Positions 2,959-44,064 of a stretch of DNA of 64,000 nucleotides are shown in pieces. This DNA comes from Isurus oxyrinchus (lineage: Eukaryota). A program made the position numbers and the translations under genes. Where the stretch lies: NCBI GenBank assembly GCA_026770705.1, contig JANJGN010000071.1, forward strand, positions 1,798,001 through 1,862,000, read 5' to 3'. Below the pieces are notes generated by a model. The model saw only the letters and a list, made by a program, of their open reading frames with translations. It did no database searches and was not told the origin of the DNA. Position 1 is the first letter of the stretch. Each line of letters starts with the position of its first letter.

Positions 2959-3164
2959 GTAAGTATGGACACCTTTCATTCTACATTAGCTAGAACAGTG
3001 TAGATAATGCACAGCAGGATCCCATAGAAAGGTATTCTGATGAGAATCAGAGAATCTGTTTTTTAGGGAAAATAGTGACCGGAACACAATTAATAACAGT
3101 TTCTGAACAGTAACACAGCGGCTTTTATTTCCAGCCAAGAGACCGATAGAGCAGAGCAGGAATC

Positions 3165-8520: not shown

Positions 8521-8697
8521 GGGACAAGTCAGTCTACAATGCTGCATCGGAATCAACAATACAACAATATGGGGTTTGGATCAGAAATAATCCCTTAGAC
8601 AATGAGGATCCAAAAAGATTCCTTAGACAAAGAAGATCCAAAGAGATTCATTAAACAATGAGGATCCAGGGATAAATATTGATATTTCTCTCCCCAG

Positions 8698-9062
8698 TTG
8701 GACTGTCACAAGAGTGGAAAGGTGACACTCCACGAGAGGTGACAGCGCAGGAATCTGTGTACAGATTCCATTTCGTTACAGTTATCCAGTAGAGTTGGAA
8801 AACAAACCACGAGATGGAATCTGGTTTAATAAAGAAACACACAAATTGGGTTCTCCCATTGCCTTTCACTCCAAGGATCACAGTCACGAGTTACCATGGT
8901 TCCACCATCGGACCCGGCTGTCTGGAGACCTGAAAGATGGCGACTGTTCCCTGATTATAAACAACATCAGACGGGAAGATGCAGGACCTTATTTTTTCAG
9001 GATAGAATTTGACGGCAGGAAAAGATACAACTACTATCCTGTAACCCAGCTTCATGTTTCTG
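8698..9062 (+). pseudogene. Siglec-like gene A, V-set exon V2 (frameshifted)
   Basis: Same splice sites as V1 but 365 nt. A 4-nt deletion near 8754 gives TAG at 8790-8792. The second B-strand Cys codon is TTT. The downstream frame still reads YFFRIEF. Confidence 0.85.
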
Positions 9063-10377: not shown

Positions 10378-10674
10378 ATTTCACAGATAAACCCACGATA
10401 TTCCCTGCTGAAATTATTGCAGGAAAGCGTGTGGATGTAAGCTGCACCTTCAACACAACGTGCAATGGAACAGCAGCACCTGTCTTAACCTGGGACACTC
10501 CCACTGACGTACCTGGATCAGTCTCAAACACTGTAACTCAGCATGGTGTCACTCTGACCTATACTTCTGTTCTGACCCTGATCCCATCACTCAAACACCA
10601 CGGACACACTCTCAGCTGCAGAGTGAGATATCCATCTGTTTCATCGGAGCAGACCCTCGTACTAACTGTGCAAG
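10378..10674 (+). CDS. Siglec-like gene A, C2-set (domain 2) exon copy b (intact)
   Basis: 297 nt, phase 1/1, ag|..G|gtaagt. Encodes DFTDKPTIFP..VSCTFNTTCNG..LTW..TLSCRV..LTVQ. The extra Cys after the B-strand Cys matches the Siglec interdomain disulfide partner. Confidence 0.88.
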
Positions 10675-10995
10675 GTAAGTACATACACCTTTCATTCTAC
10701 ATCAGCACTCCCTCAGCGCTGACCCTCTGACAGTGCAGCCCGTTCTCAGTGTCCACATTCTCAGACCTCTCAAAGTGCTTCACAGTCGATAGCAATTAAC
10801 TGATCTTTAATTGATTATTGCTGAATGAAGGGACAAGCTGTCTAAACTTTACAGCTCGCACACATTATTTTCCATGGCAACTCTCCTCCAATCAGAGATC
10901 ACTTGCCACCCAATCAGCACTCTCTTCCCTTTAAATATAAATTGTTGTTCATTTTCTGTGGTAAACCTGCGATCTGTCTTGTTGAGTCCTGCGCT

Positions 10996-13849: not shown

Positions 13850-16560
13850 GACAGTGCAGCGTTTCCTCAGTGCTGACCCTCCGTCAGTGCAGCGCTCCCT
13901 CATTACTGTCCCTCTGACAGTGCTGCACTACCTCATTATTGACCCTTTTCAAGTGCAGCACCCCGTCAGCACTGACCTTCTGACAGTGCAGCACTCCCTC
14001 ATGGATGACAATCTGACAGTGCAGCACTCCCTCAGTACTCACTCACCCACAGTGCAGCATTACCTCAGTACTGATCCTCTGATACTGTATCCCTCCCTCA
14101 CTACTGACCTTCCGACAGTTCGGCACTCCCTCGGTACACACCTTCTGACTGTGCAGCACTCCCACAGTGCTGACAAACTGACAGTGCAGCATTCCCTCAG
14201 TACTGACCCTCTGACACTGTATCCCTCCCTCACTACTGACCTTCCGACAGTTCAGCACTCCCTCAGTACTGACGCTCCCACAGTGCAGTACTCCCTCAAT
14301 TCTCACCCTCCCACAGTGCAGCACTCCCTCAGGACTCACCCTCCCACAGTGCAGTACTCCCTCAATTCTCACCCTCCCACAGTGCAGTACTCCCTCAGGA
14401 CTCACCCTCCCACAGTGCAGCCCTCCCTCAGTACTCACCCTCCCACAGTGCAGCACTCCCTCAATTCTCACCCTCCCACTGTGCAGCACTCCCTCAGGAC
14501 TCACCCTCCCACAGTGCAGCCCTCCCTCAGTACTCACCCTCCCACTGTGCTGTGCGAGTTGTTTCAATCAAGACTGGTGCACAAAGAGGGAGGTTTCAAT
14601 GCTAAATCATTGAAATCGTGAAAATTATTTTTAGGCTTACGGGAACAAAACTTAGTTCCTCAAATCCTTTCTTTTGCAATAACACACAGTACAAGAATTG
14701 TGTTTAAATAAATTCCAGTTAAACTTTGCCATGAAAGGATATCTCTCCGCTCTACCTCAGTACTAACCCTCCCACAGTCCGGCACCCCCTCAATACTGAC
14801 CCTCCAACTGTGCGGAAATCACTCAGTACAGACCCTCCGACAGTGCAGCACTCCCACATTACTGACCCTCTGACAGTGCAGCACTCCCACATTACTGACC
14901 CTCTGACAGTGCAGCAATCCCTCATTACTGACCATCTGACAGTGCAGACCTCCCACATTACTGACCCTCTGACAGTGCAGCGCTCCCACATTACTGACCC
15001 TCTGACAGTGCAGCACTCCCTCATTACTGACCACGTGACAGTGCAGACCTCCCACATTACTGACCCTCTGACAGTGCAGCCCTCCCACATTACTGACCCT
15101 CTGACAGTGCAGCACTCCCTCATTACTGATCCTCTGACAGTGCAGCACTCCCTCAGTACTCACCCTCCCACAGTGCAGCACTCCCTCAGTACTCACAAAC
15201 CACAGTGCAGCACTCCCTCAGTACTCACACTCCCACAGTGCAGCAACCCCTCAGTACTCACCCTCCCACAGTGCAGCACTCCCTCAGTACTCACTCTCCC
15301 GAAGTGCAGCACTCCCTCAGTACTCACACTCCCACAGTGCAGCACTCCCTCAGTACTCACCCTCCCACAGTGCAGCACTCCCTCAGTACTCACCCTCCCA
15401 CAGTGCTGTGTGAGTTGTTTCAATCAAGACTGGTGCACAAAGAGGGAGGTTTCATTGCTAAATCATTGAAATCCGTGAAAATTATTTTTAGGCTTACGGG
15501 AACAAGACTTAGTTCCTCAAATCCTTTCTTTTGCAATAACACACAGTACAAGAATTCTGTTTAAATAAATTCCAGTTAAACTTTGCCATGAAAGGATATC
15601 TCCTCACGCTCCGCTCTACCTCAGTACTAACCCTCCCACAGTCCGGCACCCCCTCAATACTGACCCTCCAACTGTGCGGAACTCACTCAGTACTGACCCT
15701 CCGACAGTGCAGCACTCCCACATTACTGACCCTCTGACAGTGCAGCCCTCCCACATTACTGACCCTCTGACAGTGCAGCACTCCCTCATTACTGACCATC
15801 TGACAGTGCAGACCTCCCACATTACTGACCCTCTGACAGTGCAGCCCTCCCACATTACTGACCCTCTGACAGTGCAGCCCTCCCACATTACTGACCCTCT
15901 GACAGTGCAGCACTCCCTCATTACTGAACCTCTGACAGTGCAGCACTCCCTCAGTACTCACTCTCCCACAGTGCAGCACTCCCTCAGTACTCATACTCCC
16001 ACAGTGCAGCACTCCCTCAGTACTCACCCTCCCACAGTGCAGCACTCCCTCAGTACTCACCCTCCCACTGTGCTGAGCGAGTTGTTTCAATCAAGACTGG
16101 TGCACAAAGAGGGAGGTTTCATTGCTAAATCATTGAAATCCGTGAAAATTATTTTTAGGCTTACGGGAACAAGACTTAGTTCCTCAAATCCTTTCTTTTG
16201 CAATAACACACAGTACAAGAATTGTGTTTAAATAAATTCCAGTTAAACTTTGCCATGAAAGGATATCTCCTCACACTCCACTCTACCTCAGTACTAACCC
16301 TCCCACAGTCCGGCACCCCCTCAATACTGACCCTCCAACTGTGCGGAACTCACTCAGTTCAGACCCACCGACAGTTCAGCACTCCCTTATTACTTACCCT
16401 CTGATAGTGCAGCACTCCCTCATTACTGACGCTCTGATGTTGCAGCACTCCCACATTACTGACCCTCTGACAGTGCAGCCCTCCCACATTACTGACCCTC
16501 TGATAGTGCAGCACTCCCACAGTAAACTCCCGCTGACATTGCAGCACTCCCTCCGTAATG
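13850..16560. repeat. 33-bp minisatellite arrays with a triplicated ~200-bp spacer
   Basis: The spacer gagttgtttcaatcaagactgg..gccatgaaaggatatctc recurs at about 14555, 15412 and 16079. Confidence 0.92.
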
Positions 16561-20600: not shown

Positions 20601-21827
20601 ATGATATAAAGGCACCAGCCACTGATACGGAATTGGGTAAATACATTGTGGGTTCAGTTATTTAGAACAGGGACATGAGAACAGATATACAAGGATAGAA
20701 AGCTGGGAGACACCTGCGGCCAAACTGTGTGAGCTGTGTTCTGCTCACAGGCCAAAGTGAAACTTGGACTGGATGGTGTTATCATCCCAGCTGATGTTAC
20801 TACTGGGCAAGTCAGATCCCAGGGTGGAACTCAGCTTGATAGGTCCTAACTTTTATTTTTTATTTAGGAATGTGGAGTGCGGCTACTGAACAGAGTCACA
20901 GGAGTCATCTGATGATCTTCTAACAAAAGAATAAAACATTTATTAAACTAGGAAAGACAAACTATATTACATTACACCTTCACCCAGATCTATACCTTTG
21001 CAGATTCATAAGTAGAACACAAGTTACAATAACTATCTTATATTCTCATGTTCACACTAAGTGCACAGTCGATATAAACCAATAGACGACCTGTGGTCAG
21101 GGACACCACATTCTGAAAGCAAGTGGCAGAGCCCACTTGAAACAAATTCTATGTCTCATCTGTCCCCAGACGCTTGTTACACTGTGAGCCAACCAGTCTC
21201 ACTGAAAAGCTTCTTTCATATGAGAGTTTCCAATCTCCACTCTCCAAGAACTCACTTTGGAATCTCCTCCAACATGACACTTTCACTCAGACACCTTCCA
21301 CAAGGGTCCACTTTCACTATTTCAAACTCTCCTTCCCATGTTCCTGCCCCCTGGATCGCCACGTGCATTCAGCCTTCCTTCCACGCCCTGTCTCTCCAAT
21401 GCTCAGCCGTGTCAATGGAACACCATGGCTTCACATGGCCGTAGTAATGAGTCACCAACCTGTGGTGTCTCCTAGGATCTTCTGGCTTCTCGCAAGCCTA
21501 TTTTGCTTTAGGCAAAACAAAATCAGCAAGTTAACCCAATGCCCCGGACAGTGGAATTCCAAATGCATTGTCCCAACTTCAGTTCTGTTGGAGAGCAGAC
21601 TTCTGCACAAACAGGGTCCTGAGGACCATGAACCAATGTAGAATGAACTTTTCCGCTTTTGTGTCCAGGATTCTCTTCCATCTGGTGTGATACCTTGTGG
21701 AGTTCATTGTGTGTCCTGTAGATGGTCCACACTGCAGCCACTGTGCCCGAGTGATGGAGGGGGTGGATAATGAGTCTTGTGGATCAACAAAACATCCAGA
21801 GTTAAATATTGATATTTCTCTCCCCAG

Positions 21828-22205
21828 TTGGATTGTCACAAGAGTGGAAAGGTGACACTCCACGAGAGGTGACAGCGCAGAAAGGTTCGTGTGTACAGAT
21901 TCCATGTCATTACAGTTATCCATCAGATTTGGTAAAGAAACCACATGTCGGAATCTGGAAAATGAGAAGCTACATACGGAACAAATGGTCTAAATGGTCT
22001 ACAGCCTTTCACTCCAAGGGTCACAGTCACGAGTTACCACGGTTCCGCCATCGGACCCGGCTGTCTGGAGACCTGAAAGATGGCGACTGTTCCCTGATTA
22101 TAAACAACATCAGACGGGAAGATGCAGGACCTTATTTTTTCACGATAAAATTTGGCAATCGTCCAAGCCATAACTATTACCCTGTAACCCAGCTTCAGGT
22201 TTCTG
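21828..22205 (+). CDS. Siglec-like gene B, V-set exon V3 (intact; essential Arg replaced by Thr)
   Basis: 378 nt, phase 1/1. Encodes GSCVQIPC..DCSL..YFFTIKF, with a divergent basic C-C' region WKMRSYIRNKWSKWSTAF. Confidence 0.88.
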
Positions 22206-22439
22206 GTAAGTGCTGTGTTATAATTACTCAACAATTCACATCCAACACTCAATGGGAAATAATAGTGTTTGATTTGCTTGTTTTTTGGCCGTGTTAACCA
22301 GCGTCACTATTTTTAATGATTTGTCTATTTCTGCTCCCAGATCCATGAGCTTATTGTGTGTGATTGAATCCACATCATAGCTGTAACGTAAACCGAGCTG
22401 AGGGGTGATGACACCTCCCCCCTGAGTGAAGTATCTCCT

Positions 22440-25228: not shown

Positions 25229-25284
25229 GAGTCTAGTGGATCCACAAACCATCCAGAGTTAAATATTGAGATTTCTCTCCCCAG

Positions 25285-25653
25285 TTGAACCCTCACAAGA
25301 GTGGAACGGTGACACTCCACGAGAGGTGACAGCGCAGGAAGGTTCGTGTGTACAGATTCCTTGTCATTACAGTTATCCATCGTGTCTGGAAAACCAACCG
25401 CGAGGTGGACTCTGGTTTAATAATGAGAAACAGATTCCCTGGGCTCCCATTGCCTTTCACTCCAAGGATCACAGTCACGAGTTACCACGGTTCCACCATC
25501 GGACCTGGCTGTCTGGAAACCTGAAAGATGGCGACTGTTCCCTGATTATAAACAACATCAGACGGGAAGATGCAGGACCTTATTTTTTCAGGATAGAATT
25601 TGACAATGGTCCGAGCCATAACTATTACCCTGTAACCCAGCTTCACGTTTCTG
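25285..25653 (+). CDS. Siglec-like gene B, V-set exon V4 (intact)
   Basis: 369 nt, phase 1/1. Encodes VEPSQEW..GSCVQIPC..PSCLE..DCSL..YFFRIEF; closest to V1. Confidence 0.88.
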
Positions 25654-26466
25654 GTAAGTGCTGTGTTATAATTACTCAACAATTCACATTCAACACTCAA
25701 TGGGAAATAACGCAAACTGTGACGTTTACATATTAACACAAAACACAGCTTATTATAGCACACTGTCTGATTCTCAATAACCTGGTGATAGCTTCCAGTT
25801 CAGTCCTAAAGCAACCTCTAATACTCACTTTAATATCAATGATTAAAAGTATTGACTGTGTCCATCAATGTTATCAGGTTATCCACTCCCATCGATCTCC
25901 CTAACCCTGTTTGACAGTTTTACATATCGACAAAAGAAAGATTCGCATTTCTATAGCGCCTTTCAACACCTCTGTACGTTGCAAATGGTTTCACAACCAA
26001 TGAAATAATTCTTGAAATGTTGCCCTTGTTGTAATATGGGACACACAGCAGCCAATTTATTCACAGGAAGCTCCCAGAAACAGCAATGTGATCAATAACC
26101 TGATCATCTGTTTTAGATGCCGGTTCAGTGATTGGTTCAAATGGATTCTCTCCTGCTGGGAACAGGATAGAATTTAAATCTGGCAGATTTCAGAGAAAGT
26201 AACAAGCCAGTGTGTCAGGAACTGTGAGCTGCTCCCCCACCCTCACCTGGGATTGTCAGTTCAATTGTCTCAAAGTGGAAGTGAATTCATCTGAGAGACA
26301 GAAAATCCACTAAGTCTGAAAATAGGAAATTCTCTCCTGATCGTTGTAATCTCTCAGTTCTGATATCATCCTTGTAAAAGTGCTTTCTCTTGTGGGACTG
26401 TGGTTTCTATTTGAACTGATGTTTCACGTTATATTTCTCCAAAAGGATCCATTCTCTGTCTGTTAG

Positions 26467-26763
26467 ATTTCACAGATAAACCCATGATATTCCCTGCTGA
26501 AATTATTGCAGGAAAGCGTATGGATGTAAGCTGCACCTTCAACACAACGTGCAATGGAACAGCAGCACCTGTCTTAACCTGGGACACTCCCACTGATGTA
26601 CCTGGATCAGTCTCAAACACTGTAACTCAGCATGGTGTCACTCTGACCTATACTTCTGTTCTGACCCTGATCCCATCACTCAAACACCACGGACACACTC
26701 TCAGCTGCAGAGTGAGATATCCATCTGTTTCATCGGAGCGGACCCTCATACTAACTGTGCAAG
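26467..26763 (+). CDS. Siglec-like gene B, C2-set exon (intact)
   Basis: 297 nt, phase 1/1; near-identical to 10378-10674. Confidence 0.88.
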
Positions 26764-27086
26764 GTAAGTACCGACACCTTTCATTCTACATCAGCACTCC
26801 CTCAGCGCTGACCCTCTGACAGTGCAGCCCGTTCTCAGTATCTACATTCTCAGACCTCTCAAAGTGCTTCACAGTCGATAGAAGTTAACTGATCTTTATT
26901 TGATTATTGCTGAATGAAGAGACAATCTGCCTAAACTTTACAGCTCGCACACATTATTTTCCATGGCAACACCGCCTCCAATCAGAGACCACTTGCCAAT
27001 CAATCAGCACTCTCTTCCCATTAAATATAAATTGTTGTTCACTTCCTGTTGGTAAACCTGTGATCTGTCATGTTGAGTCCTGCCCT

Positions 27087-28497: not shown

Positions 28498-29919
28498 AGC
28501 TTTGTACAGCAACAATCTGGTCAGTCAGTGCGGACAAATAACGTGTGATGTTGGGTTAAGTTGTAATGAAACTGGTCAGAATCCTGGTTAGAATCATCTC
28601 CGTATCATCGAGTTATTGCAGCAATGGAGGAGGACATTTGGCCCATTGAGTCCATGCTGTCTCTCTGTAGAGCAATCCAGTCAGTCCCATTCCCCCGCTC
28701 TATCTCCGTATCCCTGTGAGTTTATTTCCAAGTGTCCGTCCAATTTCTGTTTGAAATCGTTCATTGTCTCCACTTCCACCATCCTCGTAGGCAGCGAGTT
28801 CCAGCTCATTACCACTCGCTGTGTAAAAAAGTTCCTTCTCACATCCCCCCTCTGCCCAAAACCTTCAATCTGTGTCCCCCAGTCCTTGTCCCATCAGCTA
28901 ATGGCAACAGCTTCTCTTTGTCTACATTATCTAAACCCATCATCATCTTGTACACCTCGATCAGATCCCCCCTCAATCTCCTTTGTTCCAAGGAGAACAA
29001 CCCCAGCTTCTCCAACCCAACCTTGTAGCTAAAATCCCTCATCCCTGGACCCATTCTGCTCAATCTCCTCCCCACCCTCTCAAGGACCCTCACTTCCTTC
29101 CCAAAGTGAGGAGACCAGAACTGGACACAATACTCTAGTTGTGACCTAACCAGAGCTTTATAAATGTTCAGCATAACCTCCCTGTGTTTGTACTCATTCC
29201 CTCGATTTATGAAAAGCTTATTCTTTCCATCAGCACAAACAGCAATTTCCAAGCGGTCTCCCATCAGCAGACAGAGTGCAATGAAACATCGACATGCCTG
29301 CTTCTTAATGTACGGAGAGAAACCTGGAACGAGAGATTCTCCTTCTTCTCCTCAGCAAGCTGAATCTTTTCCTTATACCTGGTGCTCCCCAGTCCTGCTG
29401 TGTGGACACATCATAACCACGGCATTGTCTGGCTGTGTGCAGCCAACATGGTCGAATAGGAATGAACAGAAATGTGACGTTGCTAAACTCTGTTCTCTGA
29501 TTGGAATGTGCTTTCTGAATGCTGCACCTTTTTCATGCTGCGATAGATTGTAAGAAGCATTTGGGTTATGAATAAAATTACATTGATTAACACAAGTGAT
29601 TAAAATGCTCAGCCTGTTCTGTAGATATTTAAAGATTAAAATTCTTGTTTTGCTGCAAAATACTTGGCTCAAAGACATTACTTCATGTTGTCACGTTTTC
29701 CAATCAGATGAATTCCTCTGTCCATCTTTATAATAGAAATTTCCAATGTAAACATGTCACATTGTAGCTGCACACACTTGCCAGTGGCTGGTGTGATATC
29801 AAAGCTGTCTTGCTGCAGAGAAACAGCGAGAAATATTCCTGTTGTGTGCATGAACTTCATGTTAGCATGAGACACAGGCATCAGATGCAATTTTGTGCAA
29901 TTTGTACAATGTTCTTTAG

Positions 29920-30405
29920 ACAGCGCAGCACTCCCTCAGTCCTGACCCTCCAACAGTGCAGCACTCCCTCAGTTCAGACCCTCCTACAGTGCAGCACTCC
30001 CTCAGTTCAAACCCTCCGACAGTGCAGCTCTCTCTCAGTTCATACCCTCCGACAGTGCAGCACTCCCTCAGTTCAAACCCTCCGACAGTGCAGCACTCCC
30101 TCATTTCAGAGCCTCCGACAGTGCAGCACTCCCTCATTTCAGACCCTCCGACAGTGCAGCACTCCCTCATTTCAGAGCCTCCGACAGTGCAGCTCTCCCT
30201 CATTTCAGAGCCTCCGACAGTGCAGCACTCCCTCAGTTCAAACCCTCCGACAGTGCAGCACTCCCTCAATTCAGAGCCTCCGACAGTGCAGCACTCCCTC
30301 AGTTCAAACCCTCCGACAGTGCAGCACTCCCTCAGTACTGAACCTCCGACAGTGCAGCACTCCCTCAGTACTGAATCTCCGACAGTGCCGCACTACCTCA
30401 GTTCT
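29920..30405. repeat. 33-bp minisatellite
   Basis: Variant unit cagtgcagcactccctcagttcaaaccctccga. Confidence 0.92.
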
Positions 30406-31899
30406 TCTCCGCCGATGCTGCCAGACCAGCTGAGTTTTTCCAGGTATTTCTGTTTCTGTTTTTGTTTTGAATTTCCAGCATCTGCAGTTTTTTTGCTTTT
30501 AGTGCTGGGCAGTTCCTCAGCAAGGATTCGGGCCACAAAACATTGCGAGTGCTGTGGGTCTGTGCCACGATTTAGAGAGCTGTGCTTGGCATGCCTATTC
30601 TAGTCCCAGTCCAGTGTGGTGGGGACAGCCTGGCAGTCCTGGGTTGGTCGTGCCCAGCATGGTGTGCAGGACGTGGTCAGTCCCTCACACACGTCCATCC
30701 TGGGGGTGGGTGGCTTGATACCTGGCCGCAGGTGGCACAATCCCAGTCAGGGGAGGCATCTGCAGCCGGTCAGTGGGGAGCAGGTAATATAGAGAGTAGG
30801 GGTGGGGGTGGGAATCGAGGGGGGCCGGTGGTCTCTGTAAGTCACAGTACAATGGGCCTCTAGTTGGAGAGAGGTCAGATCTACATGGGGCATTGGGATG
30901 TCAACATCAGACCGTCTAGGGAGGAGGACTGGGATGTCAACCCTGAACACAATAACATCAAGGATTAGAGAGGAAGGGAGGAGACTGATTGGAAGGAGGG
31001 GAATGTGCACATTATGCTCCTCCAGCACGATGGGAGGGACTGTGATGGTTACGGGGGTGGGGGGGTGAAGTGGGAGGGGATAGAAGCTTACCTGGTGGTA
31101 TTGCCTCAGCCTCACCCTTTTTCAAGCTGATCCAATGTCGCAGTTGAAGAATAAGCTACAAAACAAATTGGCAGGGGAGGTCTCCCAGGGCCTGTGGGAG
31201 ACATCACCCACTGCATCTTCGGCCTGTTTGAAGGGGCACCCGAACAATTCCGGCTTTTCCAAATGATGAGGAAGACACAGCTGCACCCCGAGTCCCCTAC
31301 TGGGGATCCAGAAGGTTGCAATAGCGCTGCGAGGGACTCATGGGCTCCACAGTGACTCCCTAATTAGCGACTGGAAGGTTTATGTTCATTTATCTTTATT
31401 ATCCGTTCATATTGAGCAATGGAGCTCCTGATTTGTCACCTTTCTGTACCTCGTCCAATGCTTCTGTTATCAGGACTTCCACATCGATGTGAAAGAGCCA
31501 TGATGATAGCAGACAGTCGCACAATGGGAATGGCACTAGGCCAGTGATCCAGAGGCCCAGGTGAATACTTTGAAGGCACGGGTTCAAATCCCACCACGGC
31601 AGCTGGAGGAATTTCAATTCCATTAATCAATAAATTTAATTGATTGATACATTTTTTTCTTATTCATTTCAGGGATGTTGGTGTCGCTGGCTAGGCCAGT
31701 ATTTGTTGCCCATCCCCAATTGCCTTTGAGAACATATGGATATCTGAGTTAGGATCAGGAGTAGGTCACTCAGCCCCTCGAACCTGCTCCGCCATTCAGT
31801 AAGATCATGGCTGATCTGATTGTCACCTCAACCTCACATTCCTGCCTACCCCCAATGACCTTTCACCCTCTTGTTAATCAAGAATCTATCTAGCTCTGT

Positions 31900-33850: not shown

Positions 33851-35967
33851 GTGACATCTGGAATGCGAAGCTAGTCTCAGTAATGGTGACCATGAAACTA
33901 AGGCCAATTGTTGCAAAAACCCATCTGGGTCACTAATGCCCTTTGGGGAAGGAAACCTGCCGTCCTTACCCATTCTGGCCTACGTGTGACTCCTGACCCA
34001 CAGCAATGTGGTTGACTCTTAACTGGCCCCTGAAATGGCCGAGCAAGCCACTGAGTTATATCAAAACCCGCCACAGACCAGTCAAACCAGGCGAACTGCA
34101 GCACTTCGAAAAGGCAGCTCAGCACCCCCTTCTCAAGGGGTCAGTCTGGAACAGGTAACAAACGCTGTCCACATCCCGTGAAAGAATTTTGGTAAAAAGG
34201 TAGCCGTGTATCACCACCCACGGCCAGCGCCAACCCCCCCACCCCTACCTGATTGCACCAGTTTCAGATTACACCAGGTCAATGAACGGATAGAAACCCA
34301 AACCAATGAGATGAGCACAGAGAAGGATCAAGCCAGAGAGAGTTGGTGGGAAGAATTGGGAAAGCTACAAAAAAGGCAGAGCGGACACTAACACTATAAC
34401 AAAGTAAAGACCAGAGGAGGAAGGAAGCAAGTGCGAAGAGGAATTGAGAGCAGAGCTGGTAGGCTGCTTGTCGAAGCCAAGGAACCTCCATAGGGCACAT
34501 CCACAGTGCTGTTGGGGAGGGTGATACATGGTTTTGACCCAGGATCATCAAGTGTTGCACTGGCAGAGCCTTTAAAGTAAAGGGACCTTTACTACCCATG
34601 CACCCCCCCCGCCCTACAAAGCTGTTGACCTGCTGAGTCCACCTGTACAGGCAACCTCCAGACAGTTGGCTACAGAGGCCATTGCAGCTGCTGAATATGA
34701 CTTCCAGTTTCCAACCCTTCATGAATGCAAGGATGGAGAATTGAGCAGGAATATTCCTGCACACCCTGTGGCAGATCCTGTAAATAAAAGGGACCTTCAC
34801 TCACTCCCCAAAGCTGCTGACCTGCTGATTCACATCTACAGGCAACCTCCAAATAGTCAACTAGAGAAGACAACGCAGCTGCTGAATGTGACTCCTAGTT
34901 TTAAACCCTTCACTCTGGAAAGAATGGCCTCAGTATGATTCTTCACAGAAACTGATTTTAAATCTCATGTCTAAGTATTATTTTTCCTTTGCTTACATTT
35001 TAATCCCTGCACCTGATGGCTTTATCGCTTCAACTTAAATAACTTTCAGCAGGAGCCAGGTTCAAATTGAATGGACAAGCAGGCTTGGGAGGCCAAAAGG
35101 CCTACTCCTGCTTCTGTTTATTTATGTTTGTGTTGTTATGTAGTGGAACTAGAGAGGTTATAGCAGTTATGAGAACATTAAGCAAACAGCAGCAAGAATT
35201 GAACACCTACGTTGTGGTTTATGAAAAGGTTTTCAACCTGGTCAACTGGTAAAATCTGTTGAAAGTGGGCTATCATGCCGTGTGCCCTTTGTGAGATATT
35301 TGTAACAACGTTCTCGATGTCGGAACAGCTTGCATTGAACAAAGCTGATCTTTACCCAGAACTTCAGAGGAAGGGGGGACAATTGTTCCCTGGTGTGGGG
35401 GGCATGGTGGGGGGGGAGGGTGAGGGAGAGACAAGTAGCCTGAAATACCAAGCCAGACACTTTGTGAAGACAAAAGTTGTTTATTCATTTTTTTTTTACA
35501 AAGCACAATATTTACAATTAAAGTCCCGACAAGATAATGGTGAATCATGAACACATTGTCGGGGTGAATCTGTGCCCGGGAGCATAAAGCAGCAAAATCA
35601 GGAGCCCGCTTTACATCTCTCTGAATTTTAACTATCATTAACCCCAGTAACATCCATTCAAATGACTTAGTCATAAGATTCCTCACACATTCACTTGCAC
35701 ACTCACACACCCACACCCACACAGACACACTGACACACTCACTCATTCACATTGACACACACTGACACAGTCACACACACCCACACAGACACACTGACAC
35801 ACTCACTCATTCACATTGACACACACTGACACAGTCACACACACCCACACAGACACACTGACACACTCACTCATTCACATTGACACACACATATTGACAG
35901 TCACACACACACACACAGACACACTGACACACTCACTCATTCACATTGACACACACATATTGACAGT

Positions 35968-35999
<32 letters not shown>

Positions 36000-36327
36000 C
36001 ATAAAGACAGACACAAACACAGTCACGTGAGGTGAATAGTGTCGATGTATTTAAGGGGAAGCTGGATAAACACATGAGGGAGAAATGAATAGAAGGATAT
36101 GGTGATGGGGTGAGATGGAGAAGGCGTGGGCGGAGACTCGTGTGGAGCAGAAACACCAGCATGGAGCAGATGGGCCAAATGGCTTCTTTCCCTGCTGTAA
36201 AACACAGGTAAAGTTTCAGTTGGAATTAATGAACAGGGCCTGTGTGAAATAGATTGCTAAGCAGTAGATAAGGAGGGGAGAGGCTGTGGCATGGTGCAGG
36301 ATGACCTTGCGTGAATGAGGCCAGGGT

Positions 36328-36444
36328 CTAATATCTACAGCAGATACCACAAGTCTCATTTGGTTCTCTCCAATTACAGCAGTGACAGCAGAATCTGCAG
36401 GGCCGCTGTCTGCTCATTCTCTTCTGGCGCTGCAGCAAGGAGCC
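36328..36444 (-). CDS. HAMP: Hepcidin exon 3: furin site and mature peptide
   Basis: cttttccag|GGC TCC... = GSLLQRQKR/MSRQRPCRFCCHCCNWREPNETCGICCRY*. An R-x-K-R site is followed by the C-x2-CC-x-CC-xn-C-G-x-CC hepcidin pattern (8 Cys). Confidence 0.93.
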   Translation of the reverse strand, partial: GSLLQRQKRMSRQRPCRFCCHCCNWREPNETCGICCRY

Positions 36445-37875
36445 CTGGAAAAGCAGGAGGACAATAGGTGAGAACATTCCGGAAAGAAAGAAGGCATCAT
36501 TTCAATCAGGCGCGTCATTGGAAGGAGGATGGCGCATTTCTATAGCGCCTTTCCCCTCCTCAGGATGGCCCAAAGTGTTCCACAGCTGAAGGAAGGACTT
36601 TTTCTGAAGTGGGCTCACCGCTGTAATGTAGGAAACGCAGCAGGCAATTCACGCACAGCAAGATCCCACAAACAGAAATGTGATAATGGCCCCGATTTTC
36701 AGTTTTTTACCAATGTCAGTTGAGGGATAAATGTTTGCCCCAGGAAAGCGGACATAACTCCACCCCATCCACCCCCCACCACCCCCTCCACACATACCCC
36801 CAACTCCTGACGCACTTCATCTAAATTGTGGCCATGGAATCCTCTACATCCATCTGAGAGGGCAGATGTTGTCTCAGTTTAACATCTCATCTGAAAGACA
36901 GCGCCTTCAACAGTGCAGCACTCCCTCAGTACTGACCCTCCGACTGTGCAGCACTCCCTCAGTACTGACCGTCTGACAATGCAGCACCCCCTCAGTACTG
37001 ACCCTCCAACAGTGCAGCACTCCCTCAGTACTGACCGTCTGACAATGCAGCACCCCCTCAGTACTGACCCTCCGACTGTGCAGTCCCCCGCCGGTACTGA
37101 CCCTCTGACAGTGCAGCACTCCAAGACTGACCGTCTGACAATGCAGCACCCCCTCAGTACTCACCCTCCGACTGTCCTGCACCCCCGCCGGTACTGACCC
37201 TCCGACAGCTCGGTAATTTCTCAATTATGCCTGGTGGTCCTTTTAACTCAGAGCTGAGAGTTGCAGAGAATCGAGCACACATCCTGAACTGACACTTGCA
37301 GTGCAAGTACTGGGAGCGTGCTGGTCATTTTCATGCTGCTGTCTGTGGGATCTTACTGTGCGCCAATGGCTGATTCTTTTCCCACAGTACATCAGCGACC
37401 TCACATGAAAGAAAAAAAGCACTTGATTGTCTGCGAAACACTTTGGGACGTCCTGATGTGTTGGAAGGCGCTAGAGAAATGCAAAGTCCTCTTTGTCTTT
37501 CACTCGATCCTCTAAGGTGTCTGTTGATTAACCAGCCACTCGGTGTTTGATGTAGGCCTGGTTATAAACAGTTAGAAGGATCAAATATCAAAAGTGCTTT
37601 GGCTGACAGTCAAACCGATTGTGCATTCGGAGAGATTAGATATGGTCTGCACACAATGACTCCAGTCTCTGGCACTGACTGCCGCCTGGGGTCTCCCTTC
37701 CACATAACACTCACAACTTGCATTTACACAGCGCCTCTGACATTGCAAAATGTCCCAGCCCACATTACCGGAGCGTAAATCAGAGAGAAGTCTAACACTG
37801 AGTCACATCTGGAGATATTAGGGTTAGGTGACCAAAAGCTTGGTCAAAGATGTCAGTTTTTAAGGAGCGTCTTAA

Positions 37876-37906
<31 letters not shown>

Positions 37907-38767
37907 GCAGAGAGGTTAAGGGAGGGTATTCCGGAGCTCAGGGCCCCAGGCAGCTGAAGGCACGGCCACCAATGGTGGAGCGATGGGAATCAGGGGGTCC
38001 CGGGAGATGCAGTAATGTCAGAGATTTTGGAGGAACATCGGGACCGGAGGAGGTGTTCTCCTGCTCCATATCTCTATCTCTCTTCCTCTCATCCACTCCT
38101 CCTCTCCCTGTCTCTCTCTCTCCTACTCTTCCTCTCAATTGCCCTCTCTCCCAATCTTTCTCTCCTCTCTCCCTTTTCCTGTCTCTCTCCCTCTCTCTCT
38201 CCCTGTCTCCTTCTCCCACTCTGTATCTCTCCCTCTCTCTCACACTATTTTTGTACCTTTCGCTCACTCTGTAACTCTCCCTTTCCTGTTAATTTCTCTC
38301 TCTTGGACAATCTCTCTTCCCTTTTCACTTTCCCTCACTCTGCATCTCTTCTTTAATTTCTCCCTCTGTCACTCTCTCCCACCTATGTTCTTTCCCTTTC
38401 ACCCCTCCCCGTCCCACTCTCTGTCTCTCTCTTCCAATCCCTCCCTCCCCCATTCCATCCCTCTCTCCGACTCTCGACTCCCAGCCTCTCTTTAACCCAC
38501 TCCCAGGCTGGATCAGTCTCCCTCTCACTATTCCCGGCGTGGGTTACATTTAAAATTCCTGTGGGGATATGTTCACTTCCTTGGAATTGCCTCTTCCCAG
38601 CTTTGCAAAAAAGTTGGGCGGGGGGGGGGGGCGGGGCTCGATTTCAAACATGCCTCCTGAGTATAACCGAGACAGACTGCCACTGAAATCAGCTTGAAAT
38701 CAGAAAACTTTCTGTGGAAGAAACGAGCAGGGAGAAACCTTAAAATAAGGAATGAATTTCCACCTAC

Positions 38768-38824
38768 CGTGTCCGGGGAATCCACAGATTTCTCAATCGT
38801 CGAAGAACCTAAAGCAGTGTCAAC
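38768..38824 (-). CDS. HAMP: Hepcidin exon 2: pro-region
   Basis: ctttttgcag|GTT GAC..GAC ACG|gtaggt; 57 nt, phase 0/0, VDTALGSSTIEKSVDSPDT. Both other frames are closed. Size and phase fit a hepcidin middle exon. Confidence 0.8.
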
Positions 38825-38919
38825 CTGCAAAAAGAAAGAATTTATCAGGGAGAAAGTGAGAGGAGGATTGAGGGAGAGGGAGAGAGAGAGAGAGAGGTAC
38901 AGGAGAGAGAGGGGGAGGA

Positions 38920-39565
38920 GGACAGACTTGCATTTCTCTAACGCCTTTCACCACATCCCAAAGCATTTCACAGCCACTGAAGGATGTTTTTGAAGTGCAC
39001 TCACACTGTAGGAAATGTGGCAGCTGATTTGTGCACAGCAAGATCCCACAAATAGCAATGTGATCATGGCCTAGATCATCTGTTTTTGGTGATGTTGGGT
39101 GAGGGATAAATATTGGTGCCAGGACACCGGGGAGAACTCCCCCTGCTCTTCCTCCAAATAGTGGCTGTGGGATCTTTCACACCCGCCCGAGAGGGCAGAC
39201 GGGGGACTCGGTTTAATGTCTCATTCAACATTGTTGTGCTCCCTCAGTACTAACCCTTTGACACTGCAGCACTCCCTTAGTATTAACCCTTCGATAGTGC
39301 TGCGCTCCCTCAGTACTGTCCCTCCGTCAGTGCAGCGCTACCTCAGTACTGACCCTCCGACAGTGCAACACTTCCACAGTACTGACCCTGTAACAATGCA
39401 GCACTTCCTCAGTACTGACCTCCGACAGTATAGCACTCTCTCAGTACTGTCCCTCCAATAGTGCAACACTTCCACACTACTGACCCTCTGACAGTGCAGC
39501 ACTCCCTCAGCACGGAGTGTTGACCGACGTTATGGGACTGAATTCCCTGGAGTGAGACTCAGACC
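38920..39565 (-). mobile_element. Deu-domain-like SINE with internal 33-bp expansion
   Basis: Conserved core gcacagcaagatcccaca..gagggataaatattgg..ggacaccggggagaactcc also at about 36530-36930, 45945-46215 (+) and 62135-62405. The family assignment is from recall, not a search. Confidence 0.6.
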
Positions 39566-39589
39566 AGAGATTTAGGTAGGGTTGTTCCG

Positions 39590-40690
39590 GCTGGAGGAGG
39601 TTACAGAGATAGGGAGGGTTGTAGAGGCTGTAGGAGATAACAGAGATAGGGAGGGTTCTAGAGGCTGCAGGAGGTTACAGAGATAGGGAGGGTTGTAGGG
39701 GCTGTAGGAGGTTACAGAGATGGGGGGGTTGTGGGGGCTGGAGGAGGTTACAGAGGTAGGGAGGGTTGTAGAGGCTGGAGGAGGTTACCAAAATAGATAC
39801 TGTTGTAGGGGCCACAGTAGGTTACAGAGATAGGGAGAGTTATAGTGTGGAGAGGACGTTATAGAGTTCATGAGCATTGTAGGGGCTGGAGGAGGTTACA
39901 GTGATTCTGAGGGTCGTGGGGCCTGGAGGAGGTTACAGAGATAGGGAGGGTTGTAGGGTCTGGAGGAGGTTACAGAGATAGGGAGGGTTGTAGGGTCTGG
40001 AGCAGGTTACAGAGATAGGGAGGGTTGTAGGGTCTAGAGGAGGTTACAGTGATCATGAGGGTTGTGGGGCCTGGGGGAGGTTACAGAGATAGGTAGGGTT
40101 GTAGGTGCTGGAGGAGGTTACAGAGATAGGGAGGGTTGTAGGATCTGGAGGAGGTTACAGTGATCGTGAGAGTTGTGGGGCCTGGGGGAGGTTACAGAGA
40201 TAGGGAGTGTTGTGGGGACTGTAGGAGGTTACATAGATAGGGAGGGTTGTCGGTTCTGGAGGAGGTTACAGAGATAGGGAGGGTTATAGGGACTGGAGGA
40301 GGTTACAGAGATAGGGAGGGTTGTAGAGACTGTAGGATGTTACAGAGATAGGGATTGTTGTAGGGGCTGGAGGATGTTACAGAGATAGGGAGTGTAGTAG
40401 GGGCTGGAGGAGGTTACAGAGATAGGGAGGGTTGTAGGGGCTGGAGGAGGTTACAGAGATAGGGAGGGTTGTACGGGCTGGAGGAGGTTACAGAGATAGG
40501 GAGGGTTGTAGGGGCTGGAGGAAGTTACAGAGATAGGGAGGGGTGTAGGGGCTGGAGGAGGTTACAGAGATAGGGAGGGTTGTAGGGGCTGGAGGAAGTT
40601 ACAGAGATAGGGAGGGTTGTAGGGGCTGGAGGAGTTTACAGAGATAGGGAGGGTTGTACGGGCTGGAGGAGGTTACAGAGATAGGGAGTC
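39590..40690. repeat. 37-bp minisatellite in HAMP intron 1
   Basis: Unit ggaggaggttacagagatagggagggttgtaggggct, about 30 copies; another array at about 43345-43710. Confidence 0.95.
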
Positions 40691-40865
40691 GCTGAGGAGG
40701 GATTGAAAACAAGAATGAGAATTTCAGGGGAAACGACAGAAGGAAATGATGTTAAATTCATAGAGGGCGACAATATTAAAGGCACGAACATAATAATATC
40801 AAACTGCGGAAGAGACCAGTCTATCTGGGTGGTAGACGTAGAGTCATGTGCAAGAAACACCTCAC

Positions 40866-40982
40866 CCAGAGGGACATCTCTTAGCTTAACCTCGACAAGG
40901 AGAAGAAGTGACTCAGCTGCAGGGAGAGCAGCAAAGTCAGAGTGAACAAGACAAGTCGCCATTTCATCTGGGAGCTTCCCAT
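40866..40982 (-). CDS. HAMP: Hepcidin exon 1: signal peptide (apparent lesion, 3' boundary uncertain)
   Basis: Reads MGSSQMKWRLVLFTLTLLLSLQLSHFFSLSRLS*EMSLW|gtgagg, a hydrophobic leader downstream of TATAAGA. There is an in-frame TAA at 40883-40881 before the phase-0 donor at 40866. The alternative weak donor (GAG|gttaag, 40891) is phase 2 in this frame. Confidence 0.65.
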
Positions 40983-41052
40983 CTCTGCCTGTCTCTTCTG
41001 ATCTTCTGGCTCTGCTTTGATGCTTTGGTTTGTAACTAGAGGAGCTTCCTGC

Positions 41053-41212
41053 TCTTATACCTGAAACACTTGAACACTTGAAACACTACCCGCGGGTGGG
41101 TAGCTGTGTGGTATCACACCCATTTCTGGATATTGCAGTGTCGATGTTCCCTGTCCCACTGGCCTGGGACCAGCAGTAAGGTCACTGGGACATTGACTGT
41201 CTGGCGCCGAGA
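41053..41212 (-). promoter_or_regulatory. Hepcidin proximal promoter (TATA, degenerate STAT-like site, BMP-response-like GGCGCC with adjacent AGAC)
   Basis: TATAAGA at 41059-41053; ATCCAGAAA near 41123-41131; GGCGCC at 41203-41208 immediately followed by AGAC on the - strand. Confidence 0.6.
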
Positions 41213-44064
41213 ACTATCAGTCCCTCCGCAACGCCCTTCACCTTGTGCAAATATGTGTTCGTATTGATGCAACACAACATAGCAAAAACATAGGGGCTGG
41301 TTCTTATGTCGGCAAATCAGGTGAAGCGCACGCCCCCTAACCCCTTACTCCTCTCATTGCTCCTCCTTCCTGCCAGACACTTACTATTTTACAAATTGTG
41401 TGCGTTGCTTTTATTTCGGACAAGGGGCCTCGAGGGGGAACTGATTTACGCTGAGGTTTAGGGGTTAACAGCCATGTCATGTGTTGATCGGTCAGTGTTT
41501 ACCATGTGGAGACTGTCTGTCACCAGCTTTGTTAATGGTTTATCCAGGAACATTGAAGGGCATGAACGTTCTTGCTTTGTATGGAACAAGTTACCAACTG
41601 GGTTCAGTCATCGACTCAGACTCACATCAACATAAAATGGCTTCTGACAGGTAAGTTTCTATTACATAAGGGTAGGAGGAGGCCATTTGGCCCCTCGAGC
41701 CTGCTCCACCATTCAATGAGATCATGGCTGATCTGCAAACTAGCCCCATATGCCTTTGTCCCATCTCCTTTAATACCTTTGGATAACAAAAATCTATCAG
41801 TCTCACAGGTTTAAAATGAACAACTTGATCGTGCATCAGTTCCTGTTTGGGGAAGAGAGTTCCAAATTTCTCCCACCCTTTGTACTTCCTAATTTAATTC
41901 CTTTTTAGGCTCTGACCCCGAGTCCCAGACTCCCCCCAACCAGGGGAAATGGTTTCTCTTTATCGCCCCCAATCTGTTCCCCTTAATATCATGCGAGCTT
42001 TCATCAAATCTCCTGCTTAACATTCTAACTTCCAGGGAATATAAGCCGAGTTTGTGTTTAATCTCTCCTTGTGATTTAACCCTTGGAGTCCCGGTCTCAT
42101 TCTGGTAAACTGACACTGCTCTCCCTCCGAGGTCAATATATCCTTCCTAAGGTGTGGGGCCCAGAATGTCTCACAGTGACTCCAGGTGTGGTCTAGCCAG
42201 GGCTTTATGTAGACTGAAGCATGACCTCTGCCCCCTTATATTCTAATCCGTGAGATAGAAAGGGCAGAGTTCCAGAATTGTTGTGTTTATTCGACAACAG
42301 AATAACAGAGGAAGGTTTCCTCTCTGCCCTCTTCAGCCCCACTGGGAAGGTCAGGATGAGAAGGTTGGGCTGGGTCCCCTGTACTGGACACTCGCTGAAT
42401 CTTCCAATGATAGTTCTGGGCTGGATTTCAAAACGCATAGACAAGGATTCAGTGTTCCATCACATTCTGCCTTTGTCTCTTTTCCTCTCGTTCTCTTTCT
42501 CTACCATCCTCTCTCTCTATCTATCTATCTTTCTCCTCATTCTCTCCTGCTTCATCTCTATCACTTTCTTTCTACTTCTTTGTGTGTCTCTGTCTCTCTC
42601 TCTCTCTCACTCTTTCTTTCCTTGTCCTTATCTCTTTCAGTGTCTCCCTCTTTCTCTCTCTCTCTCTCTCTCTCTAAATGTGACCCTCTCTAACAGTTTG
42701 GCCCAGTACTCTTATTTCCCTGTTTTACTGGTGTTCCATTTGAAGGTATACAAGACCAGATCAGACCAGAATGTTTATTTTCCAGTGTTTACTGTGTTTT
42801 TTTCATTCTGGATGTCTCTCGACTCTGTCTGTCCCTCTCTGTCCTTTTATTTCATTCTTTCATGTGATGTGGACATCACTGCCTAGGCCAGCATTTATTG
42901 CCCAACCCTAATTGCCCTTGTTCAGAGGCCACTTTTTAAAAGTGAACCACATTGCTGTGGGTCTGGAGTCACATGTAGGCCAGACCAGGTAAGGACAGCA
43001 GATTTCCCTCCCTAAAGGGCATTTGTGACCCAAATACAAGAATCAGCAATGGTTTCCTGGTCATCATCGGACTTTTAATTCCAGGTTTTTATTGAATTGA
43101 AATTCCACCAACTGCTGTGGTGGGATTCTAACCAGGGTCCCAGGAGCATTACACTGGGTCTCTGGATTACTGGTCCAGCGAAAATACCATCAGGCCAACA
43201 CCTCCCCAATCTTCCCTTCCACCATCTTTCACACTTGTTCTGTCTCTCTCTCACTCTCCTTCTCTCTTCCCCCTCTCTCAGTCTCTGTCTCTCAATCTCT
43301 CTATCGCTCTCTCTCTCCCTGTCGCTCTCTCTCTGACTGTCTCCCTCCCTATATCTGTAACCTCCTCTCTCTGTCCCTTTCCTCCAGCCCCTACAACCCT
43401 CCCTATCTCTGTAACCTCCACCTGCCCCTACAATCCTCCCCATCTCTGTAACCTCCTCCACCTCCCACAACCCTCCCTATATCTGTAACCTCCTCCACAA
43501 GCCCATACAATCCTCCCTATCCCTGTAACAACCTCCAGCCCGACAACACCCCTATACATGTCACCTCCTGTAGCCACTGTAACCCTAATAATCTCCCAAG
43601 CCTCCACCAGCCTTGACAATCCTGCCCATCTCTGTAACCACCTTCAACCCCTACACCCCTCCCTATACCTGTAACCTCCTCCAGCCCCTGTAACCCTCCC
43701 TATCCCTTGAAGGGTTCTCAAAATTCCCACATTTTCCATATCATCAACAAGGATATCACTTTTGCACCTTTAAACTGCTGAGTTAAGTGGAAAACCCTGC
43801 AGACAGGAGGCTGGGCCCATGAAGGCCTGGGGCTGCACATGTCCGGGCTTATTGAGAGCAGTGTGGAATGTTTGGCCTGAAACCAGACAACGAGAGGAGA
43901 CAGAATACGCATTCTTCCCTTTAATACAATCAACCCAGAGAAAGACTTCACTTCACACGCAACTGAAGCCCATCTAAATCTTGCATCAATAATCGCTCCT
44001 AACTTCTGAGGCCGGCAATTTAATTATGCGAAGCCATCAATACTCCACACATACAATGGCTTTC

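What the first reader, a model, noticed from the sequence alone, without database searches (positions are those of the whole stretch)
36328..36444. Hidden, divergent hepcidin: extended loop, N-glycan sequon, no ferroportin-type N-terminus
Seen: the 29-aa mature peptide MSRQRPCRFCCHCCNWREPNETCGICCRY follows RQKR and is too short for the ORF track. All 8 Cys are kept. The loop between Cys5 and Cys6 is 8 residues (NWREPNET) and contains N-E-T; the N-terminus is MSRQRP. Known: iron-regulatory hepcidins begin DTHFP or QSHLS-like, need this segment for ferroportin activity, and have a 4-5 residue loop. Teleost HAMP2 peptides lacking it are mainly antimicrobial. Inference: a lineage-specific, possibly antimicrobial or glycosylated hepcidin paralogue (5 Arg, 2 Glu).
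Basis: partly seen in the sequence, partly recalled or inferred. Interest (0 to 1): 0.85.

Follow-up and report, generated by a model that had tools for sequence, protein, structure and literature searches.

The report
Shark long-loop hepcidin copy, flawed donor
This is a real three-exon gene copy for an unusual long-loop form of the liver peptide hepcidin; the same peptide is very strongly transcribed in a shark, but this copy has a faulty first splice site and is probably a silent duplicate.

Summary
On the minus strand, 36444-36328 is the last exon of a hepcidin gene: an RQKR cleavage site, then a 29-residue peptide with all 8 Cys, an 8-residue Cys5-Cys6 loop holding N-E-T, and the N-terminus MSRQRP. 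The exon alone passes Pfam Hepcidin (29.9 bits, cut-off 27).

Public contigs fix the gene model: exon 1 about 41026-40890, exon 2 38824-38768, exon 3 from 36444. Depth on exons is 100-500 times that on introns in two runs. The abundant mRNA shows no listed difference from the window in the mature-peptide exon.

- **A standard-looking hepcidin is also expressed.** One contig from the same sample reads ...RQKR-MS-HLSICMYCCG. The long-loop form is therefore a paralogue, not the only hepcidin.
- **This copy has a faulty first splice donor.** Intron 1 begins TT (40889-40888), not GT. Ordinary GT-AG splicing puts a stop at codon 36. All RNA contigs also carry G where the window has A at 36204. The RNA probably comes from sister copies.

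The gene lies among CD22/Siglec-like exons, as HAMP does in mammals. Function is untested. This scan has already reported the same long-loop hepcidin, and similar donor faults, at other places in this genome. I found no paper on shark hepcidin sequences.

The parts
41243..41250 (-). C/EBP-type consensus TTGCACAA in the promoter
   Evidence: Motif scan. About 0.28 such sites are expected per 618 nt. Motif level only.
41199..41208 (-). GGCGCC followed directly by AGAC (a BMP-responsive-element-like site plus a SMAD half site), about 145 nt upstream of the TATA box
   Evidence: This is one of only 3 GGCGCC sites in the 64 kb, with about 0.03 expected in this stretch. Its role is inferred from knowledge of HAMP promoters and was not tested.
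41054..41059 (-). TATA box (TATAAG)
   Evidence: The spliced contig X5 record 32 starts at 41026, about 30 nt downstream.
40890..41026 (-). Exon 1: 5'UTR, ATG at 40982-40980 and a signal peptide with hydrophobic core LVLFTLTLLLSL. The last base used in the mRNA is 40890.
   Evidence: Joint 38824|40890 seen in 9, 2 and 1 contigs of X1, X2 and X5, and bin depth 290,291 in X1. Hydropathy peaks at 2.5.
40888..40889 (-). First two bases of intron 1 read TT instead of GT: the donor lesion. The GT one base upstream (40890-40889) would shift the frame.
   Evidence: The joint ends are reported as CT..AA on the plus strand, which is TT..AG on the gene strand. A script shows a stop at codon 36 with GT-AG splicing and an open 88-codon frame with the junction seen in RNA.
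38825..40889 (-). Intron 1, holding a 37-nt minisatellite (39573-40688, 30 copies) and a 33-nt SINE-like array (39239-39510)
38768..38824 (-). Exon 2, 19 codons of the pro-region (VDTALG...SPDT), phase 0 at both ends
   Evidence: Joints, sequence, bin depth 162,833 in X1
36445..38767 (-). Intron 2, with canonical GT..AG ends
   Evidence: Joint 36444|38768, reported as CT..AC with cut +1, in 8, 5 and 1 contigs
36418..36444 (-). Start of exon 3: end of the pro-region with the furin-type site R-Q-K-R (36429-36418)
36331..36417 (-). Mature 29-residue peptide with 8 Cys, the loop NWREPNET (36375-36352) and the sequon N-E-T (36360-36352)
   Evidence: The AlphaFold2 model is a hairpin with strands 18-24 and 31-37, mean pLDDT 66.
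36100..36330 (-). Stop codon (36330-36328) and 3'UTR, which runs on below 36100. At 36204 the window has A and every RNA contig has G.
   Evidence: bin depth 714,636 in X1. At 36204 the other-letter depth equals the total depth in X1, X2 and X5.

Best explanation
This is one copy of a multi-copy, long-loop hepcidin paralogue that sits in a shark CD22/Siglec-like gene cluster.

Shown:
- The gene has three exons encoding a signal peptide, a pro-region and the mature peptide.
- mRNA with this exon 3 is spliced in frame into an 88-codon reading frame.
- That mRNA is extremely abundant in two runs from one sample and about 1000 times lower in a third run from the same sample.
- A standard-looking hepcidin transcript is present in the same sample.

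Inferred mechanism: the prepropeptide enters the secretory pathway. A furin-type convertase cuts after RQKR. The 29-residue product folds as the four-disulfide hepcidin hairpin, with its turn enlarged from 4-5 to 8 residues; the turn may carry an N-glycan. At N-terminal positions 3-6 it has R-Q-R-P where hormone-type hepcidins have H, F/L, P/S and I/L. It therefore probably does not act on ferroportin. More likely it serves defence or another extracellular role, like teleost Hamp2 but arising from an independent duplication.

This copy: intron 1 starts TT instead of GT, and its 3'UTR variant is not seen in RNA. It is probably a recent silent duplicate, and the RNA comes from sister copies.
For: - Pfam Hepcidin is above the cut-off for exon 3 alone, and the motif occurs once in the window.
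- Splice joints are 36444|38768 (canonical) and 38824|40890. Exon depths in X1 are 290,291 (exon 1 bin), 162,833 (exon 2 bin) and 595,000-715,000 (exon 3 and 3'UTR bins), against 270-1,500 in non-repeat intron bins. Exon depths in X5, from the same sample, are 100-350.
- No other-letter rows fall within 36328-36444.
- The loose end at 36412 translates to HLSICMYCCG after ...RQKR-MS. That sequence is absent from the window.
- GT-AG splicing of the window sequence gives a stop at codon 36. The junction seen in RNA gives an open 88-codon frame.
- At 36204 the window has A and all contigs have G. Intron contigs differ from the window by about 1-3% and differ between X1 and X2.
- CD22-type V-set exons are at 1413-1883, 21806-22294 and 25263-25733, with C2-set exons nearby.
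- Sea bass Hamp1 and Hamp2 have 5-residue loops, and only Hamp1 regulates ferroportin (PMC5665920).
Against: - The runs are coded and their tissue is unknown, and contig depth is a poor measure of expression.
- Contigs drop rare variants, so low-level RNA from this copy is not excluded.
- The TT at the donor could be an assembly error or an allele of the reference animal.
- The RNA sample may be another individual or a close relative, given the 1-3% intron differences.
- Loss of ferroportin action is inferred from residue identity only. Cys7, Phe9 and the 6-residue N-terminal length are kept.
- A GGCGCC-AGAC element and a C/EBP site in the promoter would fit iron/BMP control.
- A net charge near +3 does not mark the peptide as an antimicrobial.
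Confidence: 0.65

Rival explanations
1. The copy is fully functional. The T at 40889 is an assembly error or a reference-individual allele, and this locus contributes to the abundant mRNA.
For: All three exons are open and identical or nearly identical to the abundant mRNA. The promoter has a TATA box, a C/EBP site and a GGCGCC element. The contig X5 record 32 matches 40890-41026 with no mismatch.
Against: No contig supports the window's A at 36204. Intron contigs differ from the window by 1-3%. Other follow-ups of this scan report donor changes in further copies (s1-865382, s1-870761, s1-870987); I could not check these.
Confidence: 0.2
2. The long-loop peptide is the main iron-regulatory hepcidin of this lineage and still acts on ferroportin.
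For: It is by far the deeper hepcidin-family contig in run X2, about 199,000 against 6,460 for the contig that skips the mature-peptide part (depth is a rough guide only). It keeps Cys7, Phe9 and the N-terminal length. A GGCGCC-AGAC element lies in the promoter.
Against: A transcript with the hormone-type MS-HLSIC start is present in the same sample. His3 and the hydrophobic residues at positions 4 and 6 are replaced by Arg, Gln and Pro. In sea bass only the QSHLSL-type peptide regulates ferroportin (PMC5665920).
Confidence: 0.12
3. The long-loop form as a whole is a decaying, functionless hepcidin relic.
For: This copy has a broken donor. The scan's notes list truncated and chimeric hepcidin copies elsewhere in the genome (unchecked).
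Against: All 8 Cys, the furin site, the signal peptide and the reading frame are intact. The mRNA encoding this peptide is among the deepest contigs in two runs and is correctly spliced.
Confidence: 0.03

Closest known systems
Hepcidin (HAMP, Pfam PF06446), hormone type: human hepcidin-25 and teleost Hamp1
   Same: It is a three-exon prepropeptide with a signal peptide, a pro-region and an R-x-K-R site directly before the mature peptide. It has 8 Cys in the same order, 6 residues before Cys1, and Cys7 and Phe9 kept. It is very highly expressed. It lies beside Siglec/CD22-type genes, as HAMP lies beside MAG and CD22 in mammals (my own knowledge for the mammalian order). The promoter holds a GGCGCC element.
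   Different: The loop between Cys5 and Cys6 has 8 residues instead of 4-5 and carries an N-E-T sequon. N-terminal positions 3-6 read R-Q-R-P instead of H-F/L-P/S-I/L, so the x-x-His metal-binding motif is absent. The peptide has 29 residues instead of 25-26.
Teleost Hamp2-type hepcidins (for example sea bass Hamp2; bass hepcidin structure 1S6W)
   Same: It is a multi-copy paralogue that exists alongside a hormone-type hepcidin. It shares the CRFCC start of the core and the CCR-aromatic end. It lacks the hormone-type N-terminal motif.
   Different: Hamp2 has a 5-residue loop and no sequon. The teleost duplication is lineage-specific, so the shark form must come from an independent duplication (inference). 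Hamp2 has measured antimicrobial activity, and this peptide has none measured.
Other long-loop hepcidin copies in this same genome, noted by this scan
   Same: They are described as having the same 29-residue long-loop peptide, the same Siglec neighbourhood and very strong transcription. Some copies are reported with a changed first splice donor (s1-863544, s1-869579, s1-868585; s1-865382, s1-870761).
   Different: I could not read those loci, so identity of sequence and of the lesion is not verified here.

Membership tests
Hepcidin family (PF06446) | Match to the family profile above the curated threshold | tested here: met
   29.9 bits against a cut-off of 27, E 7e-7, for the 38-residue exon alone
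Hepcidin family (PF06446) | Eight cysteines in the order C-x2-CC-x-CC-loop-C-x2-CC | tested here: met
   The loop is 8 residues instead of the usual 4-5.
Hepcidin family (PF06446) | Three-exon prepropeptide: signal peptide, pro-region, and a convertase site R-x-K/R-R directly before the mature peptide | tested here: met
   Exon borders come from RNA joints, the RQKR site and the hydrophobic core. In this copy the exon-1 donor reads TT.
Hepcidin family (PF06446) | Conserved neighbourhood beside Siglec (MAG/CD22-type) genes | tested here: met
   Three V-set exons match PF24518 Ig_CD22 and PF07686 above their cut-offs, with C2-set exons alongside. The mammalian gene order is from my own knowledge.
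Hepcidin family (PF06446) | Very high expression in liver | tested here: inconclusive
   Exon contig depths are about 1.6e5 to 7e5 in X1 and about 8e4 to 2e5 in X2, and about 1000 times lower in X5 from the same sample. The tissues are not on record.
Iron-hormone hepcidin (HAMP / Hamp1 type) | N-terminal motif x-[ST]-H-[FLI]-[PS]-[IL]-C | tested here: not met
   The N-terminus reads M-S-R-Q-R-P-C. The co-expressed paralogue reads M-S-H-L-S-I-C.
Iron-hormone hepcidin (HAMP / Hamp1 type) | Binds ferroportin and causes its occlusion or internalisation | not testable with these tools
   No shark ferroportin sequence is on hand. The reference chains of complex prediction cover bacteria, archaea and phages only.
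Iron-hormone hepcidin (HAMP / Hamp1 type) | BMP/SMAD- and STAT3-responsive promoter | tested here: inconclusive
   GGCGCC-AGAC lies at 41208-41199, with 0.03 expected. There is no TTCNNNGAA within 618 nt upstream of the ATG. These are motifs only.
Teleost Hamp2-type antimicrobial hepcidin | Measured antimicrobial activity without ferroportin regulation | not testable with these tools
   This needs a bench assay. The net charge is about +3.
N-glycosylated secreted peptide | N-x-S/T sequon that is actually occupied | tested here: inconclusive
   The N-E-T sequon is present at 36360-36352. Occupancy cannot be tested here.

The most novel reading that the evidence does not exclude
The long-loop, possibly glycosylated hepcidin is a second circulating hormone of cartilaginous fishes with its own target. 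One candidate target is the second ferroportin paralogue, which lacks the hepcidin-binding cysteine and is reported for some cartilaginous fishes (PMC8235187). In that case early jawed vertebrates would have run two hepcidin-receptor pairs.
Probability: 0.06. Interest if true: 0.8.

Novelty: new variant of a known kind. Interest (0 to 1): 0.42.

Why it matters
Hepcidin is the master iron hormone of vertebrates, and cartilaginous fishes are where its binding site on ferroportin first appears (PMC8235187). I found no paper describing shark hepcidin sequences in four literature searches.

If the most abundant hepcidin-family transcript of a shark is a long-loop form without the hormone-type N-terminus, then hepcidin split into a hormone copy and other copies in sharks independently of teleosts. 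That gives a natural test of which parts of the peptide ferroportin binding needs.

For genome annotation, the genes are too short for ORF-based calling. Individual copies, like this one, can look intact and still be dead.

Tried and rejected
- **Word-indexed protein search.** The 49-residue reference and a 57-residue reference scored over residues 18-57 found no candidate. The peptide is not in that collection within 27-99 residues. This says nothing about longer or shorter entries.
- **phmmer against 1.84 billion representatives.** The single hit, P0001, is a 723-residue repeat translation without the Cys pattern. I reject it as a composition artefact.
- **PDB sequence search.** Only bass hepcidin 1S6W turned up, at E 0.36. 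It is useful for the alignment only.
- **AlphaFold2 on the single sequence.** The model is a hairpin of modest confidence, pLDDT 66. Foldseek against the PDB gave only an arenicin hairpin at E 9.4, which is not evidence.
- **ESM Atlas.** A hepcidin cluster came up at score 0.75, which is a lead only. Two earlier tries did not complete.
- **Other hepcidin pieces in the window.** blastn and tblastn of the three exons and the promoter found none.
- **Alternative in-frame splicing for this copy.** The second acceptor at 38809 and the weak donor at 40912 need non-consensus sites and have no listed joint. I rejected them.
- **Joined 88-residue model.** A local script joined the exon references only to count where the first stop falls, and printed no sequence.
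- **Literature.** Four searches found no description of shark hepcidin sequences. The supplement of the nurse-shark plasma proteome paper does not contain the word hepcidin. Preza et al. 2011 is not held.

Full report
**1. Observation**

- The peptide has 8 Cys in the hepcidin order, an 8-residue stretch NWREPNET between Cys5 and Cys6, and an N-E-T sequon.
- It has 5 Arg, 2 Glu and 1 His.
- The Cys motif occurs once in all six frames of the window.
- The exon alone passes the Pfam Hepcidin gathering score: 29.9 bits against 27, E 7e-7.

**2. Gene model and transcription**

Reading upstream on the minus strand gives:
- a TATAAG box at 41059;
- an ATG at 40982, followed by a hydrophobic signal-peptide core;
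- a 57-nt exon at 38824-38768;
- a polypyrimidine tract and AG acceptor before 36444.

I laid Logan contigs of four public runs on 36100-41200. Runs X1, X2 and X5 come from one sample of coded organism A. X4 comes from organism B.

Contigs join 36444 to 38768 with canonical GT..AG ends, in 8, 5 and 1 contigs of X1, X2 and X5. They join 38824 to 40890 in 9, 2 and 1 contigs.

Summed contig depth:

| Stretch | X1 | X2 |
|---|---|---|
| Exon 1 bin (40888-41058) | 290,291 | 77,107 |
| Exon 2 bin (38665-38835) | 162,833 | 79,786 |
| Exon 3 bin (36271-36441) | 595,332 | 198,810 |
| 3'UTR bin (36100-36270) | 714,636 | 168,988 |
| Non-repeat intron bins | about 270-1,500 | about 3-220 |

In X5, from the same sample, exon depth is only 100-350.

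The runs are labelled RNA only as a guess. However, spliced joints together with a 100-500-fold excess of exon over intron depth cannot come from genomic DNA. Depth from contigs is a rough figure, and the tissue is not on record.

The table of other letters has no row inside 36328-36444. The abundant mRNA therefore shows no listed difference from the window in the mature-peptide exon. A spliced contig begins at 41026, about 30 nt below the TATA box.

**3. This copy has a faulty first donor**

The mRNA junction uses 40890 as the last base of exon 1 and 38824 as the first base of exon 2. In the window the intron then begins TT (40889-40888) and ends AG. The tool reports the ends as CT..AA on the plus strand.

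The only GT nearby lies one base upstream. Splicing there gives a stop at codon 36 of the reading frame. The junction seen in RNA gives an open frame of 88 codons. That script joined the exon references only to count stops. The joined model was not printed or sent to any search tool.

Either a G became T at intron position +1, or one G of a GGG run was lost. The first would restore the consensus GTAAG, so it is the likelier history.

Three more observations point away from this copy as the source of the RNA:
- Every contig in X1, X2 and X5 carries G at 36204, where the window has A.
- Intron contigs differ from the window by about 1-3%.
- Those intron contigs differ between X1 and X2, which come from the same sample. 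Several copies or alleles are therefore transcribed.

Junction variants were also seen, each with the in-frame length: ACG to ATG at 38769, and changes at 38823 and 40892.

My reading is that the RNA comes mainly from sister copies and this copy is a recent silent duplicate. An assembly error, or a difference between individuals, is not excluded.

**4. A standard hepcidin is expressed in the same sample**

One X1 contig matches the window down to 36412, that is through ...RQKR-M-S. It then runs on with 30 other letters that translate in frame to HLSICMYCCG. That is the hormone-type start; compare QSHLSLC in sea bass Hamp1 (PMC5665920).

An X2 contig of depth 6,460 joins 36331 to 36412 and skips only the mature-peptide part. 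It probably comes from the same paralogue. Neither sequence is present in this window.

The long-loop peptide is therefore not the only hepcidin of the animal.

**5. Surroundings**

- **Neighbouring genes.** Plus-strand exons at 1413-1883, 21806-22294 and 25263-25733 match V-set and the CD22 first-Ig family above their cut-offs. C2-set exons follow them. More Ig exons lie on the minus strand at 57100-58878. A fourth ORF at 8726-9142 looks like these V-set exons by eye but was not scanned. In mammals HAMP lies beside MAG and CD22 (my own knowledge), so the neighbourhood fits descent from the ancestral HAMP locus.
- **Promoter.** One of only three GGCGCC sites in the 64 kb lies here, directly followed by AGAC (41208-41199). 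A C/EBP-type TTGCACAA is at 41250. No TTCNNNGAA occurs within 618 nt upstream of the ATG. These are motif matches only.

**6. How it most likely works**

Shown: a secretory prepropeptide frame, an R-Q-K-R site, the full Cys set and very high tissue-restricted RNA.

Inferred:
- Cleavage by a furin-type convertase yields a 29-mer of about 3.55 kDa and net charge near +3.
- The peptide folds as the four-disulfide hairpin. A single-sequence AlphaFold2 model gives strands at residues 18-24 and 31-37 of the exon with the long loop as the turn. Mean pLDDT is only 66.
- Compared with hormone-type peptides, it keeps the 6-residue N-terminal length, Cys7 and Phe9. Positions 3-6 are R-Q-R-P instead of H, F/L, P/S and I/L, so the x-x-His motif is gone.
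- In sea bass, only the QSHLSL-type peptide regulates ferroportin (PMC5665920).

I therefore rate a non-ferroportin role, in defence or something else, as most likely. The charge is no higher than that of ordinary hepcidins, so the argument for an antimicrobial role is weak. Glycosylation at N-E-T is possible but untested.

**7. Comparison and novelty**

- The peptide meets the tests for the hepcidin family.
- It fails the N-terminal test for the hormone type.
- It resembles teleost Hamp2 in its CRFCC start and CCR-aromatic end. The alignment shows a 4-residue insert in the loop, and the duplication must be independent of the teleost one.
- Protein searches found no close relative in the collections.
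- Four literature searches found no description of shark hepcidin sequences.
- One paper notes that hepcidin in nurse shark plasma had no orthologue in the whale shark annotation (PMC9207270). That fits such genes being missed by annotation.

This scan has already reported the same long-loop hepcidin at many other places in this genome, some with a changed first donor. I could not read those loci.

**8. Verdict**

This is a real hepcidin-family gene copy of an unusual long-loop variant. The family is strongly expressed alongside a standard hepcidin. This copy is probably silent because of its donor. Its function is untested. I class it as a new variant of a known kind, of moderate interest.

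Noticed in passing
window 1413-1883, 8726-9142, 21806-22294, 25263-25733 (+), with 2611-2907, 10326-10727, 26415-26816 (+): There are four near-identical V-set exons and three C2-set exons. Three of the V-set exons were scanned and match the CD22 first-Ig family. Together they look like a repeated Siglec-like unit upstream of the hepcidin gene on the opposite strand.
   Followed up: partly
window 39573-40688: A 37-nt minisatellite of about 30 copies, 85% matching, fills half of hepcidin intron 1. The same unit recurs around 43400-43700.
   Followed up: partly
window 36904-37208 and 39239-39510; also 3000-5700, 14000-16500, 29900-30600: Arrays of a 33-nt unit (consensus ...CAGTACTGACCCTCCGACAGTGCAGCA...) lie in both hepcidin introns and as long blocks elsewhere. 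In the organism-B run X4 these are the deepest contigs, with depth up to 824,000.
   Followed up: no
window 35698-36021: A 64-nt tandem repeat (4.5 copies, 95% matching) inside a CA-rich tract lies just below the stretch of 3'UTR that I covered. No AATAAA was seen between the stop codon and this tract, so the poly(A) site is not placed.
   Followed up: no
window 38826 (loose end, run X2): One contig joins hepcidin exon 2 to 61 other letters not found in this window. It may be an alternative or chimeric upstream exon from a sister locus. The scan's notes mention hepcidin-Siglec chimeric transcripts elsewhere.
   Followed up: partly
window 41060-41200: Contigs of depth 143 (X2) and about 3,000 (X1) extend upstream of the TATA box. 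They carry a 7-nt shortfall in the duplicated CAAGTGTT stretch at 41075-41087. This points to promoter differences between copies and some upstream transcription.
   Followed up: no
window 5945-8651 (+) and 52701-53198 (-): These are fragments of reverse-transcriptase (LINE-type) ORFs. The second matches RVT_1 just below its cut-off.
   Followed up: partly
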